Notes: generated by a model not told the origin, from the sequence alone. A stretch of 64,000 bases of DNA from Mizuhopecten yessoensis (GCF_002113885.1 NW_018405607.1:117329-181328), one strand, 5' to 3'. Shown: positions 1,802 to 16,172, numbered from the stretch's first letter. Numbers and translations are program-made.

Positions 1802-3347
1802 AGCATACAACTTTAATATAGCGTGTAATATACCTTTCACTGGAAATCACTGTTAACTGTAACAACAGCAATGAAAGGAGCATTTGAATGTTTCTTCTGT
1901 CAACATCGTGGAATGTTGTAATGATTATACAATTTCTGATAACAAAGTATATTTACATATGTTAAATTTTTTCTGTGATATGCTGACAGTCACATGGCAG
2001 TTTATAAGAACGGCATTGACTTAAAATGTTCGGTCTCATAGACAATATTGCTATTTATGAACTGGTTGTTTCTAAAAATAGAACTACATGTAGTGTTGCA
2101 ATCAAATATACATTCGACCTACAAAAACCAGTCATCCACCTTTTAAAATTAATTAATCAATTGCAGCTTTTAGCTTTAATCAATACAAGGGTTCATAATT
2201 AAAACTCCAATATATTATTCTGACTTCAGAATACATCCTCAGTCAATACTGGTATATTTTTCCTTGGTTTAAAAATCTATGTACATATGTATTATGATTT
2301 AGGCAAAGCTTATAACTATATAAAATATATAACTCAATTTTTTATAATTTATAATCTTTCTCTTAAAAATATATTTTCAACAACATTGATTTTAAAAACT
2401 AAGTTATTATATATAAAACATTTCCATTTATAATGGTTTTCTGAGTAACATATTAATAATCTTGAAAAAATACAAACATTGCCAACACCAATTAAAAGTT
2501 TTAAGTAAAACAATTGTATATAAAATGTAAATAAAAACATATATACTAAATCTAGATCTTAAATATTGGATGGAATGTCCTGATTAAAATAACACAATTG
2601 GAATCACCAATGCCTTATATCATGTCATATTCAAGGTAAAATAATACAAATAATTCAAATAGTCCTTAACCTCAAGACAAATATTGTCATCTAAATTATA
2701 CAAAGAACCATAACTCTTGGCATGAAACCTGATTTAAGTATGTGACACTACAGCTTCCATAGAGATTTGTATACCCATTTGCAACATTTGGCAATTGTGT
2801 AAGAGTACATGAGATATGCCCCATACCATACTATGTAGTGTGACACCTTGACTGACTACAGATGGGGGTGTAAGCCATAATTTATAGCCCGTACAAATTG
2901 GGGACTAATTAATTTAACCATATAGATAGCATTCTGTTACAATTTTCAGCAATATGATTTTGGCATGTTTTGACGTTTTAAAAAATGAAAATTTAATCAG
3001 CCTGATAGCATCCTTCATGTACTTCTTTTCTCACCAAATAAAACTGATACCTTTAATATAATGTTGAAGAATTTGTAAAAACGTTTTTAGATATAGCTGG
3101 TGGGAAGAAATGCCTTAAAAAATCTTACAAAAAATATCAAAAATATTTTTGAAACCTCTTTTCTATGATAGCATAACCTATTAAACTTCAAATCAGTGAC
3201 TTGTTTCTAGAATTTAAAAATTTGAATAAAAACAAATTTAGTTAGAAATATGATTTAGTTATCAAACTCCTACACCATATGAGTGTGTGCATTTAAGTTC
3301 ATTTTCACATCTAAATACAATAACATTTTGCTAACATCACACAATCA

Positions 3348-3710
3348 TTATAACTTTGCGTGAAGACGGACATCAGGCGAGCGTCCATTTTTGCTGAGGC
3401 GAATAGCCAGCTGTACACATTTGCAGATTTGATCGAGGACGTGGAATGGGACGGACTTGTTCACAGGCAGGTAGACAACGTGATTGATGAGGTAGCGCGC
3501 CTCATGAGGATAGCTTCTGTTCAAGGCCTCATAGGGATAGTTCTGGTTCCCGTCTTTGTGCATGTCGTCGAAGCTGCTGGCAGATGTAGCGTGTTGATTG
3601 TGAAGCTCGACACTACAGTTTTCTGGTTCGATGAGATTTAGCTGCGTAGCTCCACGGTAAGCATCTATCCCCATGGCATTCAGTATTTTAACAACTGTGT
3701 CGGGATTATC
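3348..3710 (-). CDS. DegT-like aminotransferase, last coding exon, ends ...VRLHAKL*
   Basis: ttctctccag acceptor at 3712-3711, phase 0. Encodes GIDAYR...ARYLINHVVYLPV, matching the DegT C-terminal small domain. TAA at 3350-3348. Total CDS 1359 nt = 452 aa. Confidence 0.9.
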   Translation of the reverse strand, partial: DNPDTVVKILNAMGIDAYRGATQLNLIEPENCSVELHNQHATSASSFDDMHKDGNQNYPYEALNRSYPHEARYLINHVVYLPVNKSVPFHVLDQICKCVQLAIRLSKNGRSPDVRLHAKL

Positions 3711-3982
3711 CTGGAGAGAAAGAAAGCAAGCAAATATGAAAAATAGGACTGTACAAGGTTGAGTGTATGGCTTTAATTATTATGGACCTTTGAGCGAGGG
3801 TATATTTTATCTCCCCAAAATAAGATTTGGCTTTTAAGTAATTTTAAAAGACACATGTACTTGACATGACTCTTTCGACCCTTCAAAATTCGGGGAAATG
3901 GGATTCGACTTCTGAAATTGATATATGTCAAGAGTTAACAGAAATCCTTGTTAAATATAATTTAAGGGTCGTGTTTATAGAA

Positions 3983-4330
3983 GGCTTGGTAGTCTAGTGG
4001 TAGGACGCCGGGCTCTTGACCGAAGGTTTGCGGGTTTGAGTCATGTCACATTATTGTGTTGCATCCTTGAGCAGGATTAACTTCACTCCGATTGTACCAG
4101 TCTACTCAGCTGTAAATTAGTATGTTGTTGGGCAGTGCTAGAATTGTTGAATGCTAGCTGTGAGTGCCTAAATGGCAGCACCGGCTGTATGCTCCCCAGG
4201 AAGTTGAGAAAGATGTTGGCTGGTTGCATGGCCCTATATCCACAGATAATAATTTGTGAACCGCTTTGAGACGAACTACGAACTAGGTTGTGATAAAGCG
4301 GTATATAAAAACCTTGATTTATCATTGTTA
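3983..4330 (+). mobile_element. tRNA-derived SINE with CORE-like middle and L2-like 3' tail
   Basis: A box (tagtctagtgg), B box (ggtttgagtc), tccttgagcagg segment, and tail tgtgaaccgctttgag...aaagcggtatataaaa. Confidence 0.7.
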
Positions 4331-4539
4331 TGATATAGTGTTTATATAGTTCTGCTTTTGATATCCTGTGTCTGCTATGCAACTTTGGATTTTTGTCCAT
4401 GTACAGTCTGGTAGCATTAAGGAATTCTACAAATAATAATGTACTTGAACATAAAAGTAAATTGTGTAGCAGTGTAATGTTAAAATTGACCTGCATTTAT
4501 CTTGGAGTAGCTCTTTGAATACTCTTCAAAGTTCAGGTA

Positions 4540-4845
4540 CCATTGTCTACAAGCCTTGTGATTGGTCAGAATTTACCGGTATAGCTGGAATCACTTGTCC
4601 CTTCACTCTCGTCATGAGAAAACCAGAGTCAAGAGAAGATATATGTATATCCGAGAGCATAAACCCATGGATTTCACAAATACTTTCTGGAATGAATATT
4701 CTGTATATTTGTAGCCTGAGTCATACTCCTGTTTATCAGCTAGTCTGTGTGTATATATAGACAATAATTTCTTCACGCTTTCAATTGGGAATTTGAATTG
4801 TGAATCGTATAATTTCATTGTTCAATTATATACGTTGAATTTTGT
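4540..4845 (+). mobile_element. Degenerate Crypton-like non-autonomous element
   Basis: Short IR attgtcta / tagacaat, TGATTGG after the left IR, and a degenerate terminal hairpin. Confidence 0.35.
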
Positions 4846-5029
4846 TTGCCTGTAGCAAAGGATATGGCAACTTATTGGTTTAAATATTTATTCTGTATGT
4901 CGATCACTAGATGTTTTACCAGGTTTCTGTAAGATGACCATTAAAAATTAACATGAAAATAAACATCAACATTTATATATATGTTATTGATATTAAACAT
5001 CTGAAAATAGCATTTTCATGTCAACTTAC

Positions 5030-5734
5030 CATCAATATTGGGAAAAGCCAGTAGTTATTGACTTCTGCCTGCATCCCCACCATCGTGACTTCCTCTGGTA
5101 GCCTCTCTTTCACATACTCTGCCTTTACTTGTGAGGCGTTGAAGTCTGTCTGATCAAAATTATCCAGCCTCCGTTTCATTGTGGCAAGTAGGGCGTTTGA
5201 TGGTTGTGCTCGTATTCTTTCTATCATCCGATCGGGGAAACCCCGGAGAAGTTTGATCACAACCTTTTTGTGGTCAATGCTTAAGGTTCTTGTCAATACC
5301 ATTAATGGTTTGATGATCGACGGACAATCTAGGAGAATATAGACCCCAGAATATTTCAGAATTTTTTTCAGATATTCAGAATGTTTCTGTATAGGATATT
5401 TCAAATAAGTTTCTCTCATCTGTGCATATAATTTCTGATCTTTGATTTTTGCAATAGCACCTCCAAACGCTGTTGAATATTTGATGACGCCAAAACTGAA
5501 AAGTGCAAGATCACTTCTAGGGTTTCCAGTCCTCTCAAAACCGCAAAAACACTCAGCACAATCCTCGATGACATAAATGTTTTTCCGTTGAGCGATGTCG
5601 ATAATAGCTTCAATGTCGCACCATTTGCCGTAGATGTGAGCGATGAGGATGGCAACAGTTTTGTCGGTGATCAGAGATTCGAGGAGTTCAACTTTAGGCC
5701 CAGTTGTTTCTATACTCACATCAAAGGGGACAAC
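5030..5734 (-). CDS. DegT-like aminotransferase, coding exon 3 (PLP-binding core)
   Basis: ttgaag acceptor and ATG|GTAAGT donor. 705 nt, phase 0/0. Contains motifs ITDKTVAILIAHIYG, VIEDCAE (PLP Asp) and FSFGVIK (Schiff-base Lys position). Confidence 0.93.
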
Positions 5735-5951
5735 CTTCAACAGACAAGACAAAATGTTCTTAATTGCGTTTTTATTTTCGCTTTTATTTAAGGAATACCC
5801 AAGATTATTTTGAGGTTATATTGAATATACCTAAATAAAGTTGTGTGCGTGTTGTGTTGTGAAATCTGTGAAACTGAAGTTTAAATAACAGACCAATGAT
5901 TTGTTTATGTTTTTACATTATATGATCCTTATGCATTTGGGAACTTAATTA

Positions 5952-11427: not shown

Positions 11428-11684
11428 CTTGAGCTTGTGGTGTTTGACAATATACACCATGTCTGGAATGTTGATAGCAGACATGATGACCTCTGAACCT
11501 GGAGGATAGTCCTTGACCTTCAGGTATAGGTCAAGGCCAGATCTGACAGAGAGGCAGGGCAACACCGAGTTCTGATTGGTTGGATTTGACCACATTGCCT
11601 GTAGCTCCTTTACTATTGGCTCCCTGTTTGCTGTACGGTTGATACATTGTGAGGCACTGAAAAGCAGGTCACGCCAGTCTGCGT
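11428..11684 (-). CDS. DegT-like aminotransferase, coding exon 2
   Basis: tttcag acceptor (11686-11685) and AAG|GTTTGT donor (11427). 257 nt. Encodes CLSVRSGLDLYL...PPGSEVIMSAINIPDM, equivalent to the SGTxAL...GDEVI region of DegT-family enzymes. Confidence 0.9.
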
Positions 11685-14173: not shown

Positions 14174-14207
14174 CAATATAGACACAAGTGTATGGTAAGA
14201 CTGGCAT
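14174..14207 (-). CDS. DegT/DnrJ/EryC1/StrS-like aminotransferase, coding exon 1 (MPVLPYTCVYI + G, phase 1)
   Basis: ATG at 14207 with an in-frame TAG 10 codons upstream. A G|GTGAAT donor at 14174/14173 gives phase 1, matching the phase-1 acceptor at 11684 and yielding ...CVYID-ADWRDLL. An acceptor (tttcag) at 14375 bounds the 5' UTR part of the exon. Confidence 0.7.
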
Positions 14208-14586: not shown

Positions 14587-16172
14587 GTCATGCATAAAAA
14601 GTACCCCCCTACCAAAAAGTATCCGGATACTTTTTATACCTGCATAAAATGTACCCCCNNNNNNNNNNNNNNNNNNNNNNNNNNNNNNNNNNNNNNNNNN
14701 NNNNNNNNNNNNNNNNNNNNNNNNNNNNNNNNNNNNNNNNNNNNNNNNNNNNNNNNNNNNNNNNNNNNNNNNNNNNNNNNNNNNNNNNNNNNNNNNNNNN
14801 NNNNNNNNNNNNNNNNNNNNNNNNNNNNNNNNNNNNNNNNNNNNNNNNNNNNNNNNNNNNNNNNNNNNNNNNNNNNNNNNNNNNNNNNNNNNNNNNNNNN
14901 NNNNNNNNNNNNNNNNNNNNNNNNNNNNNNNNNNNNNNNNNNNNNNNNNNNNNNNNNNNNNNNNNNNNNNNNNNNNNNNNNNNNNNNNNNNNNNNNNNNN
15001 NNNNNNNNNNNNNNNNNNNNNNNNNNNNNNNNNNNNNNNNNNNNNNNNNNNNNNNNGAGTCATGTAAAAACATTTACAGTTATGTTATAGTCATTACCCA
15101 ACCTATATTCAACTCCCCACCCCCCCGGATACTTTTTATACACCCGACCAAAATGTCCCCCCGGATACTTTTTATACCCTGACCAAAAAGTACCCCCCTA
15201 TGAAAAATCTCATATTTCTGTGTTTTTTTTATACAATTGAGTTCAGAACTTGAACAGGACATCACAGGGGAATATTTATCCACCCCTACCCCACCAATTT
15301 ATTAAAGACTTTGTTTCTGTTAAACATGAATAAATATTAAAACACTTAATTGCATTGGTTTGTTTTATATGCTGTTTTTAATCAGGTGGTGAAACCTTAT
15401 CCTTATTAGCAATATTCATTCAATTTCAAATATATCATAGTTGTATTAGTTTTTAAATAGATTAATTATATGTGTTGATAAAGAAAAATGGTCGGGTTGT
15501 ATAAAAAGTATCCGGGGGGTGGGTAATGACTATAACATAACTGTAAATGTTTCTACTTGACTCTCCAAACGTAATTGTGTCCAGCGATTGAAAATTATTT
15601 TGGCATCATTTCCTGGCCCCGGGGGTGGGGATTGGTGGGGTAGGGGTGGATTAATATTCCCCTGTAATGTCCTGTTCAAGTTCTGAACTCAATTGGATAA
15701 AAAAAAAGAAGAGAAAAATCATTTTTTTATAGGGGGGTCCTTTTTGGTCAGGGTATAAAAAGTAACCGGGGGGTACATTTTGGTTGGGTGTATAAAAAGT
15801 ATCCGGGGGGTGGGGAATTGAATATAGGTTGGGTAATGACTATAACATAACTGTAAATGTTTCTACTTGACTCGATCCCCAAACGTAATTGTGTCCAGCG
15901 ATTGAAAATTATTTTGGCATCATTTCCTGGCCCCGGGATGGGGATTGGTGGGGTAGGGGTGAATAAACATGCAACTGTAACGTTCTGATCAACTTCTGAA
16001 CTGTTCTTGATTAAAAATTTTGAAACATTTGGTTTTTTCATAGAGGGGTACTTTTTATACAGGGGGGGTACTTTTTGATAGGGGTATAAAAAGTATCCGG
16101 ATACTTTTTATTCTGCATAAAAAGTATCCGGATACTATTTAAGCAGGAGGTACATTTTATGCATGACACCGG
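14587..16172. mobile_element. Foldback element with long modular inverted arms, spanning an assembly gap
   Basis: Termini gtcatgcataaaa / ttttatgcatgac-accgg. 15057-15298 is the reverse complement of about 15630-15873. Repeated aaaaagtatccggatacttttt palindromes. Direct repeat 15490-15650 vs 15780-15960. Confidence 0.8.

What the first reader, a model, noticed from the sequence alone, without database searches (positions are those of the whole stretch)
3348..3371. The DegT-like protein ends in a canonical peroxisomal targeting signal (…VRLHAKL*)
Seen: the last codons give AKL-stop on a short tail beyond the conserved domain, with a basic residue upstream. Known: [SAC]-[KRH]-[LM] is PTS1, and nucleotide-sugar amination is normally cytosolic. 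Inference: a sugar-aminotransferase fold repurposed for a peroxisomal reaction, such as acyl, aldehyde or lipid amination. This would point to an undescribed invertebrate peroxisomal pathway and is my best candidate for new biology in the window.
Basis: partly seen in the sequence, partly recalled or inferred. Interest (0 to 1): 0.8.

Follow-up and report, generated by a model that had tools for sequence, protein, structure and literature searches.

The report
Conserved peroxisome tag on DegT aminotransferase
A scallop gene for a bacterial-type (DegT-family) vitamin-B6 aminotransferase ends in the peroxisome import signal AKL, and almost every relative in other animals and in some protists ends in SKL or AKL, so this looks like an undescribed peroxisomal enzyme whose substrate is unknown.

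Summary
On the minus strand, 3371..3348 reads V-R-L-H-A-K-L-stop. This is the end of a spliced, expressed four-exon gene: 14207..14174, 11684..11428, 5734..5030 and 3710..3348. Its 452-residue product is identical to Mizuhopecten yessoensis 'uncharacterized protein LOC110449309'.

- 40 of 46 terminal-exon homologues end in SKL or AKL.
- 37 of 42 named species end in [SAC][KRH][LMI]. They include molluscs, annelids, nemerteans, a rotifer, a nematode, a centipede, a sea spider, echinoderms, a hemichordate, cnidarians and oomycetes.
- The linker before the tripeptide varies freely, from 22 to 90 residues.
- 0 of 69 bacterial relatives carry such an ending.

In the structure model the last 13 residues form a flexible coil after the final helix. 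There is no N-terminal targeting extension.

The enzyme keeps the PLP lysine and aspartate. It is nevertheless far from every characterised sugar aminotransferase and carries extra family-specific invariant arginines.

Bacterial cousins are fused to GlpD-like, DprE1-like and PlsC-like domains. This suggests a keto group next to a phosphoester, such as DHAP or acyl/alkyl-DHAP, but that is inference only. I found no paper linking this family to peroxisomes. Localisation and substrate are untested. The scan had already noted the gene itself on this window (s1-556669).

The parts
3348..3350 (-). TAA stop codon directly after AKL
   Evidence: Sequence; end of the ORF
3351..3359 (-). Codons GCA AAG TTA = A-K-L, the C-terminal PTS1 tripeptide (residues 450-452)
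   Evidence: SKL or AKL ends 40 of 46 terminal-exon homologues and [SAC][KRH][LMI] ends 37 of 42 named species
3351..3389 (-). 13-residue flexible tail NGRSPDVRLHAKL (residues 440-452) that carries the signal
   Evidence: In the AlphaFold2 model of P0347, helix 421-439 is followed by coil with block-mean pLDDT 60 (441-450) and 44 (451-452). Position -5 is hydrophobic and -4/-6 are basic across the family
3348..3710 (-). Coding exon 4 (last): residues 333-452 plus the stop
   Evidence: Acceptor ctccag|GAT. Joint to 5029/5030 in contigs of 4 runs. 100% identical to P0347 residues 333-452
3000..3347 (-). 3' UTR, at least 348 nt; it reaches the edge of the stretch that was laid
   Evidence: Spliced contigs of runs X12 and X4 continue from the exon down to 3000 (table 8)
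3711..5029 (-). Intron 3 (GT..AG); contains a tRNA-derived repeat at about 3970-4357
   Evidence: The joint skips 1319 bases with CT..AC ends on the + strand. The repeat is covered by many unrelated contigs at very high summed depth (table 2)
5030..5734 (-). Coding exon 3: residues 98-332, with the DegT PLP-binding core
   Evidence: Pfam PF01041, E = 2.8e-20. Splice sites. 100% identical to P0347 residues 98-332
5480..5482 (-). AAA = Lys182, the Schiff-base lysine in the motif S-F-G-V-I-K
   Evidence: This column is invariant K in both the family and canonical DegT proteins
5561..5563 (-). GAT = Asp155 in I-E-D-C-A-E, the aspartate that pairs with the PLP ring nitrogen in this fold
   Evidence: Invariant D in the family and in canonical DegT. 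The role is assigned from general knowledge of fold-type I enzymes
11428..11684 (-). Coding exon 2: the last two bases of codon 12 plus residues 13-97, including the family motif L-S-V-R-S-G
   Evidence: Acceptor tttcag|AC and donor AAG|gtttgt. The translation sits at P0347 residues 13-97. The loose end of an RNA contig at 5737 matches its 3' end (table 7)
14174..14207 (-). Coding exon 1: ATG plus residues 2-11 (MPVLPYTCVYI) and the first base of codon 12
   Evidence: donor G|gtgaat, phase 1, which fits exon 2. It equals the first 11 residues of P0347

Best explanation
The gene encodes a 452-residue PLP-dependent aminotransferase of a divergent eukaryotic branch of the DegT/DnrJ/EryC1/StrS family. 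Its C-terminal AKL is a genuine type-1 peroxisomal targeting signal kept by selection.

Inferred mechanism: the folded, cofactor-loaded enzyme is recognised in the cytosol by the PEX5 receptor through the flexible 13-residue tail and imported into the peroxisomal matrix. There it transfers an amino group between an amino donor and a carbonyl compound.

Shown here:
- The gene is intact, spliced and expressed.
- The tripeptide is conserved across phyla behind a free-running linker.
- The signal is absent from the bacterial branch.
- There is no N-terminal targeting extension.
- The catalytic Lys and Asp are kept.
- Four invariant arginines not conserved in canonical DegT enzymes are present.

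Inferred only:
- Import itself.
- The substrate. My best guess (about 0.2) is a ketone next to a phosphoester, namely dihydroxyacetone phosphate or the peroxisome-specific ether-lipid intermediates acyl-DHAP and alkyl-DHAP. The product would be a serinol-phosphate (2-amino-2-deoxyglycerol phosphate) backbone.

The confidence given below refers to the PTS1/peroxisomal reading, not to the substrate.
For: Gene model and expression:
- Four exons with canonical splice sites.
- The exon 3-4 joint appears in contigs of four runs from four studies, and those contigs continue into the 3' UTR.
- Each exon translation is identical to P0347, Mizuhopecten yessoensis LOC110449309, 452 aa.

Conservation of the signal:
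- Among 46 terminal-exon homologues: 36 SKL, 4 AKL, 1 SKI, 1 SNL. Two more read SKL and then run on with W where a TGA stop may have been read through (my inference).
- 37 of 42 named species end in [SAC][KRH][LMI]. They come from cephalopods, bivalves, gastropods, nemerteans, annelids, a rotifer, a nematode, a myriapod, a pycnogonid, echinoderms, a hemichordate, cnidarians and oomycetes.
- Entropy is 1.0-1.5 bits at -1 to -3, against 3.1-3.9 bits at most positions further upstream (2.7 at -5). Position -5 is hydrophobic and -4/-6 are basic. Linker length ranges from 22 to 90 residues.
- 36 of 60 eukaryote-type representatives carry the ending, against 0 of 69 bacterial-type ones, p = 3e-16.
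- Eukaryotic and bacterial rows separate at one branch, SH-aLRT 93.

Accessibility and competing signals:
- The last 13 residues are coil with block-mean pLDDT 60 and 44 after helix 421-439 in the scallop model. The Octopus model behaves the same way.
- There is no PTS2 motif. The N-terminus aligns with the bacterial N-terminus without an extension.

Enzyme:
- PF01041 scores 94 bits.
- DegT fold, Z 32-34 to many solved DegT structures.
- Lys182 and Asp155 are invariant.

Substrate hint:
- Bacterial members are fused to GlpD/GlpO-type glycerol-3-phosphate dehydrogenase (9e-55), DprE1-like FAD oxidase (5e-23) or a PlsC/GPAT-type acyltransferase.
- A 93-member DegT+FAD_binding_4 cluster is the best structural neighbour in the ESM Atlas.
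- Arginines R59, R261, R272 and R286 are invariant in the family sample but not in canonical DegT enzymes.
Against: - No localisation experiment and no PEX5-binding data exist. No dedicated PTS1 predictor could be run here.
- Five of the 42 named proteins lack a canonical signal: Capitella (SQL), three tunicates (LPS, IFP, NML), and one truncated Aphanomyces model. A small clade with long Ser/Thr-rich tails also lacks it. Peroxisomal residence is therefore not universal, or some gene models are wrong.
- S-K-L also fits a class I PDZ-ligand pattern.
- The substrate guess rests on fusions found in a minority of bacterial cousins that are only about 35% identical. 80 bacterial loci showed no conserved operon partner. 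All solved DegT structures tie in similarity, so none points to a substrate.
Confidence: 0.85

Rival explanations
1. The PTS1 is real, but the substrate is unrelated to DHAP. The enzyme would transaminate the carbonyl product of a peroxisomal H2O2-producing oxidase or of another matrix pathway, for example a 2-oxo acid, glyoxylate, an aldehyde or a 3-oxoacyl-CoA. It would be placed in the peroxisome to be near that oxidase.
For: The commonest fusion partner in bacteria is an FAD oxidase of the DprE1/alditol-oxidase type, which points to a generic alcohol-to-ketone-to-amine logic. Peroxisomes concentrate flavin oxidases (general knowledge). The extra invariant arginines would suit carboxylates or CoA as well as phosphate.
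Against: The GlpD-type and PlsC-type fusions point specifically to the glycerol-phosphate scaffold. No companion oxidase was identified in any eukaryote.
Confidence: 0.35
2. The enzyme is still a nucleotide-sugar aminotransferase, as database auto-names imply ('GDPPS-like', 'UDP-4-amino-4-deoxy-L-arabinose aminotransferase', 'perosamine synthetase'). It would make an amino sugar, either in peroxisomes or in the cytosol.
For: Best PDB matches by sequence and fold are sugar aminotransferases such as GDP-perosamine synthase, QdtB and ArnB. Names given by sources appear.
Against: - NCBIfam equivalog scores are 44-55 bits against cut-offs of 375-650.
- Pfam covers only profile positions 43-197 of 360.
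- Canonical positions are replaced in the whole family: T/H becomes R59, Y/H becomes G179, E/D becomes G188, H becomes W326. There is also a helical insert with invariant R272.
- About 90 of 433 residues do not superpose on any solved DegT structure.
- No nucleotide-sugar dehydratase or glycosyltransferase partner is conserved next to the bacterial members.
Confidence: 0.07
3. The conserved terminal [SA]-K-L serves another purpose, such as a PDZ-type ligand or a contact needed for folding or oligomerisation, and the enzyme is cytosolic.
For: S-x-L at a C-terminus also matches class I PDZ ligands (general knowledge). Localisation is untested.
Against: - AKL, ARL and SRL variants do not all fit a PDZ ligand, but all fit PTS1.
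- The extended pattern (basic at -4/-6, hydrophobic at -5) matches PTS1 context.
- The tail is unstructured and follows a linker of 22-90 residues, so a structural role is unlikely.
- The motif is also kept in oomycetes and a picoeukaryote.
- The bacterial members fold without it.
Confidence: 0.06
4. The AKL ending is a chance tripeptide, or the gene is a bacterial contaminant or a pseudogene.
For: None beyond the prior that roughly 1 protein in several hundred ends in such a tripeptide by chance.
Against: Conservation statistics. Three spliceosomal introns and spliced transcripts in four studies. Intact reading frame identical to the RefSeq model.
Confidence: 0.01

Closest known systems
DegT/DnrJ/EryC1/StrS sugar aminotransferases (Pfam PF01041), e.g. 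GDP-perosamine synthase, ArnB, PseC, QdtB, WecE
   Same: Same fold-type I PLP fold: Z 32-34, rmsd about 3 A over about 337 residues. Same Schiff-base lysine, the aspartate to the pyridine nitrogen, and the S-F-x-x-x-K and H-x-x-G motifs. Pfam hit of 94 bits.
   Different: - 13-20% identity, and sub-threshold for every NCBIfam equivalog.
- Family-specific invariant residues R59, D63, H94, G179, G188, R261, R272, R286 and W326 replace canonical ones.
- About 90 extra, mostly helical residues after the lysine.
- Eukaryotic and intron-containing, with a C-terminal PTS1.
- No nucleotide-sugar pathway partners.
Bacterial sister clade of stand-alone DegT-like proteins (N-terminus M-W-x-R-K-R-L-D-I-G; Planctomycetota, Acidobacteriota, cyanobacteria, Chloroflexota, proteobacteria), including fusions to DprE1-like, GlpD-like and PlsC-like domains
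   Same: 30-36% identity over the full length, with the same family-specific invariant residues. TM 0.87-0.91 to the Octopus orthologue in the Atlas.
   Different: No PTS1: 0 of 69. Uncharacterised as well. Usually stand-alone, without a conserved operon.
Alanine-glyoxylate aminotransferase (AGXT) and other PTS1-bearing peroxisomal aminotransferases
   Same: A PLP fold-type I aminotransferase carrying a C-terminal PTS1-type tripeptide (general knowledge; not tested here).
   Different: AGXT belongs to aminotransferase class V (PF00266), not DegT. Its substrates are alanine and glyoxylate. There is no detectable specific relationship beyond the shared superfold.
Cj1437 of Campylobacter jejuni, the dihydroxyacetone phosphate to (S)-serinol phosphate transaminase
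   Same: A characterised precedent for a PLP-dependent transaminase that aminates DHAP to (S)-serinol phosphate (PMC11800397, read). This is the chemistry proposed here as the best substrate guess.
   Different: No specific relationship was shown. My recollection that the top PDB sequence hit 7N63 was this enzyme proved wrong: 7N63 is HCAN_0200 of Helicobacter canadensis. Cj1437 serves bacterial capsule synthesis and has no targeting signal.

Membership tests
DegT/DnrJ/EryC1/StrS aminotransferase family (PF01041) | Significant match to the family profile above the curated cut-off | tested here: met
   P0347 scores 94.1 bits against a cut-off of 19.8, E = 1.3e-26, but only over profile positions 43-197 of 360. 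Exon 3 alone scores 73.3 bits.
DegT/DnrJ/EryC1/StrS aminotransferase family (PF01041) | Catalytic Schiff-base lysine and PLP-binding aspartate in register | tested here: met
   Lys182 (5482..5480) and Asp155 (5563..5561) align with invariant K and D of canonical members.
DegT/DnrJ/EryC1/StrS aminotransferase family (PF01041) | Fold-type I aminotransferase architecture matching solved DegT structures | tested here: met
   For the Octopus orthologue model: Z 32-34, rmsd 2.7-3.2 A, 331-345 residues aligned. The scallop model has pLDDT 92.
Nucleotide-sugar aminotransferase equivalogs (ArnB, PseC, WecE, DesI, RfbH, LegC) | Score at or above the curated equivalog cut-off | tested here: not met
   Best score is 55.3 bits against a cut-off of 631 (ArnB). 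The others score 44-52 bits against cut-offs of 375-650.
PTS1-targeted peroxisomal matrix proteins | Extreme C-terminal tripeptide of the [SAC]-[KRH]-[LM] type | tested here: met
   A-K-L followed by TAA at 3359..3348.
PTS1-targeted peroxisomal matrix proteins | Tripeptide conserved in orthologues while the preceding linker diverges | tested here: met
   40 of 46 terminal exons. 37 of 42 named species. Entropy profile and linker length of 22-90 residues.
PTS1-targeted peroxisomal matrix proteins | Favourable upstream context (basic or hydrophobic, no acidic residues at -4 to -6) and an accessible, flexible C-terminus | tested here: met
   The tail reads R-L-H before AKL. The family prefers K/Q/R at -4, L/V/I at -5 and K/R at -6. 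The tail is coil with block-mean pLDDT 60 and 44.
PTS1-targeted peroxisomal matrix proteins | No competing N-terminal targeting signal | tested here: met
   The N-terminus is co-linear with the bacterial N-terminus, its first 30 residues hold 2 basic and 3 acidic residues, and there is no PTS2 motif. No dedicated signal-peptide or presequence predictor was available.
PTS1-targeted peroxisomal matrix proteins | PEX5-dependent import into peroxisomes | not testable with these tools
   Needs a tagged fusion with and without AKL, PEX5 binding assays, or organelle proteomics.

The most novel reading that the evidence does not exclude
The enzyme aminates the C2 keto group of DHAP, acyl-DHAP or alkyl-DHAP inside peroxisomes. 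This would divert ether-lipid intermediates into 2-amino-2-deoxyglycerol (serinol) phosphate backbones. It would be an unrecognised lipid or metabolite branch present in most animal phyla and several protist lineages. No vertebrate, insect, yeast or plant protein appears among the roughly 45 named hits, so the branch may be missing from the usual model organisms, but absence was not tested.
Probability: 0.17. Interest if true: 0.9.

Novelty: new variant of a known kind. Interest (0 to 1): 0.62.

Why it matters
The peroxisomal enzyme inventory has been worked out mainly in mammals, yeasts and plants. This protein is a conserved, expressed enzyme with a textbook import signal. It is present from cnidarians to echinoderms and hemichordates and in oomycetes. 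It is annotated everywhere as 'uncharacterized' or with a misleading bacterial sugar-pathway name, and I found no paper that connects its family with peroxisomes.

If the localisation holds, animal peroxisomes in most phyla perform an amination step that is not part of the known peroxisomal pathways. Among the named hits retrieved here I saw no vertebrate, insect, yeast or plant protein, but I did not test absence directly. If the family is truly missing from those groups, that would explain why it was overlooked.

The finding also gives a handle on a large, unstudied bacterial DegT branch, which includes fusions to DprE1-like and GlpD-like oxidoreductases. The claim is directly testable with standard localisation and enzyme assays.

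Tried and rejected
1. A lead from memory held that the best PDB sequence hit, 7N63, is the C. jejuni DHAP transaminase Cj1437. This is rejected: the entry title says HCAN_0200 of Helicobacter canadensis. The paper that characterised Cj1437 is not held.
2. Gene neighbourhoods of bacterial relatives gave nothing. Across 80 loci from GTDB genomes, no neighbour family occurs in more than 12 loci. The ones most often close by are a GT4 glycosyltransferase (9 loci) and an SDR (7 loci). Nothing is operon-like.
3. Longer eukaryotic members of 510-813 aa were checked for extra domains, and none was found.
4. Contexts in an oomycete and in a marine picoeukaryote were uninformative.
5. Fold comparison was tried to pick out a nearest characterised enzyme. 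All DegT structures tie at Z 31-34.
6. I tested for independent gains of PTS1 in separate eukaryotic lineages. FastTree suggested three eukaryotic groups, but IQ-TREE puts all eukaryotic rows on one side of a single branch, so no convergence claim is made.
7. Literature searches for DnrJ or DegT with PTS1 or peroxisomal, for perosamine with peroxisome, and for serinol with ether-lipid terms found nothing relevant.
A narrower one worked.

Full report
**Observation.** Window 3371..3348 on the minus strand reads GTC CGT CTT CAC GCA AAG TTA TAA, which is V-R-L-H-A-K-L-stop. This is the end of ORF 3348..3674(-).

**Gene model.** The ORF is the last exon of a four-exon minus-strand gene:
- Exon 1, 14207..14174: ATG, MPVLPYTCVYI, then G|gtgaat.
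- Exon 2, 11684..11428: tttcag|AC ... AAG|gtttgt.
- Exon 3, 5734..5030: ttgaag|GTT ... ATG|gtaagt.
- Exon 4, 3710..3348: ctccag|GAT ... TAA.

Each exon translation on its own is 100% identical to the matching part of a database protein that a later search returned. That protein is P0347, 452 aa, named by NCBI 'uncharacterized protein LOC110449309 [Mizuhopecten yessoensis]'. P0347 therefore served as the referenced full-length protein. The window evidently comes from the Yesso scallop or an identical sequence.

**Expression.** Contigs from four public runs, belonging to four different studies, were laid on 3000-5900. All four carry the joint 3709->5029, which skips 1319 bases with CT..AC ends (GT..AG on the minus strand). 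Two of them continue to position 3000, so the 3' UTR is at least 348 nt. One contig's loose end at 5737 matches the 3' end of exon 2. No run shows a variant letter in 3348-3371. The runs are only guessed to be RNA, but the intron-less joint shows spliced transcripts. I saw no isoform that avoids the AKL exon, although contigs cannot exclude rare ones.

1. A search with the last exon alone returned 46 homologues at 37-60% identity. 36 end in SKL, 4 in AKL, 1 in SKI and 1 in SNL. Two more read SKL and then run on with W, where I suspect a TGA stop was read through. One ends ...RSK and then runs on, and one ends in sequence that looks unrelated.
2. An exhaustive search with the Potamilus orthologue, followed by a word search with the Octopus orthologue, gave named full-length proteins from 42 species or paralogues. 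37 of them end in [SAC][KRH][LMI]. They cover:
   - cephalopods, bivalves and gastropods
   - nemerteans and annelids
   - a rotifer and the nematode Romanomermis
   - the centipede Strigamia and the sea spider Pycnogonum
   - a starfish, a brittle star and a crinoid
   - Saccoglossus
   - Nematostella and Exaiptasia
   - oomycetes

   A marine picoeukaryote from Tara metagenomes also ends in SKL.
3. The exceptions are Capitella (SQL), three tunicates (LPS, IFP, NML) and a truncated Aphanomyces model.
4. Anchored at the C-terminus, 88 unique tails have entropy of 1.0, 1.5 and 1.5 bits at positions -1, -2 and -3. Most positions from -4 to -20 have 3.1-3.9 bits, and -5 has 2.7. Position -5 is mostly L/V/I and positions -4/-6 are mostly K/R/Q, which is the extended PTS1 context. 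The distance from the last conserved domain motif to the end ranges from 22 to 90 residues.
5. 36 of 60 eukaryote-type representatives carry the ending, against 0 of 69 bacterial-type ones (Fisher p = 3e-16).
6. In an IQ-TREE analysis the 32 eukaryotic and 30 bacterial rows fall on either side of one branch (SH-aLRT 93). The signal is therefore most simply ancestral to the eukaryotic branch.

**Accessibility and competing signals.**
- An AlphaFold2 model of P0347 (pLDDT 92) ends with helix 421-439 followed by 13 residues of coil, with block-mean pLDDT 60 for 441-450 and 44 for 451-452.
- The Octopus model (pLDDT 94.9) behaves the same way.
- The N-terminus is co-linear with the bacterial N-terminus. 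It has no extension, no PTS2 motif and no excess of basic residues.

**What the enzyme is.**
- Pfam places it in PF01041 at 94 bits, but only over the first half of the profile.
- It has the Schiff-base lysine (Lys182, 5482..5480) and the PLP aspartate (Asp155, 5563..5561).
- Every solved DegT structure superposes about equally well (Z 31-34, about 337 residues). About 90 mostly helical residues after the lysine are left unmatched.
- All NCBIfam equivalogs for nucleotide-sugar aminotransferases score 44-55 bits against cut-offs of 375-650.
- Compared with 18 canonical DegT sequences, the family, bacterial cousins included, has its own invariant residues. R59 stands where canonical enzymes have T/H. 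G179 stands for Y/H, G188 for E/D and W326 for H. R261, R272 (inside an insert) and R286 are also invariant.
- Four extra arginines suggest an anionic substrate.

**Hints to the substrate (inference only).** The closest relatives are stand-alone bacterial proteins of about 400 residues, mostly from Planctomycetota, Acidobacteriota, cyanobacteria, Chloroflexota and proteobacteria.

Eighty loci show no conserved neighbour. Some members, however, are fused to other enzymes:
- GlpD/GlpO-type glycerol-3-phosphate dehydrogenase, E = 9e-55 to PDB 3DA1.
- DprE1-like FAD oxidase, E = 5e-23. A 93-member cluster of such fusions is the best structural neighbour in the ESM Atlas.
- A PlsC/GPAT-type acyltransferase.

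GlpD and DprE1 both oxidise a secondary alcohol on the carbon next to a phosphoester, and PlsC-type enzymes acylate glycerol-phosphate backbones. The common denominator is a ketone beside a phosphoester, that is DHAP or its 1-acyl or 1-alkyl derivatives.

In eukaryotes, acyl-DHAP and alkyl-DHAP are made inside peroxisomes (general knowledge). [quoted passage not shown] That distribution resembles the one seen here.

A DHAP-to-(S)-serinol-phosphate transaminase exists in Campylobacter (Cj1437; PMC11800397). I could not show any specific relationship to it, and my recollection that PDB 7N63 was that enzyme was wrong. I rate the DHAP-scaffold idea at about 0.2.

**Comparison with the known.** The enzyme works like a DegT aminotransferase and is a member of that Pfam family. 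It is not a member of any characterised nucleotide-sugar subfamily. It shares its targeting logic with PTS1 enzymes such as AGXT but is unrelated to them beyond the superfold. Searches of about 8.4 million papers and preprints found none that holds DnrJ or DegT together with PTS1. The single paper holding DnrJ and 'peroxisomal' is titled 'Horizontal gene transfer in chromalveolates'; I judged it unrelated from its title and abstract and did not read it.

**Verdict.** The protein already sits in databases as an uncharacterised entry. What is new is the recognition of a conserved, apparently peroxisomal branch of the DegT family. Localisation and substrate remain to be shown experimentally.

Noticed in passing
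window 3970-4357 (inside intron 3): A tRNA-derived repeat (SINE-like; it starts with a tRNA-like ggcttggtagtctagtggtagga...). Many unrelated contigs from all four runs lie on it, with summed depth in the thousands, so it is a highly repeated and transcribed element.
   Followed up: partly
window about 1130-1230 and about 1500-1800 (downstream of the gene's 3' end): Tandem duplications. A unit of about 45 bp ('gaattatctaaaatctacaatttaaaatacatgtt') occurs twice. A run of degenerate units of about 30-40 bp ('gatgacacatttgaaatgtacaca...') produces long spurious ORFs on the minus strand.
   Followed up: no
The exon at 14207 is the one that matches the RefSeq protein. I did not test whether the upstream copy is an alternative first exon or a relic.
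   Followed up: partly
window about 14650-15050: An assembly gap or masked run of N just upstream of coding exon 1.
   Followed up: no
window about 3510-3625 (-), residues about 362-400 of the protein: A scallop-lineage insertion of about 20-30 residues in a surface loop of the C-terminal domain. It is predicted disordered (pLDDT below 50) and is absent from the Potamilus, Mya and Lymnaea orthologues in the alignment.
   Followed up: partly
P0213, P0245, P0224, P0266, P0300; L052:9947-12577; L080:6515-9229: Bacterial members of the same DegT branch are fused to GlpD/GlpO-like, PlsC-like or DprE1-like domains. This is an uncharacterised family of bifunctional enzymes, probably converting an alcohol to a ketone and then to an amine; one Atlas cluster alone holds 93 members.
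   Followed up: partly
P0386 (Ciona), P0377 (Phallusia), P0180 (Clavelina): The three tunicate orthologues lack a PTS1 (they end in LPS, IFP and NML). This is either a lineage-specific relocation of the enzyme or wrong 3' gene models.
   Followed up: no
P0187, P0194, P0206: A small eukaryotic sub-clade carries long Ser/Thr/Arg-rich C-terminal extensions in place of the PTS1. Its taxon was not determined.
   Followed up: no
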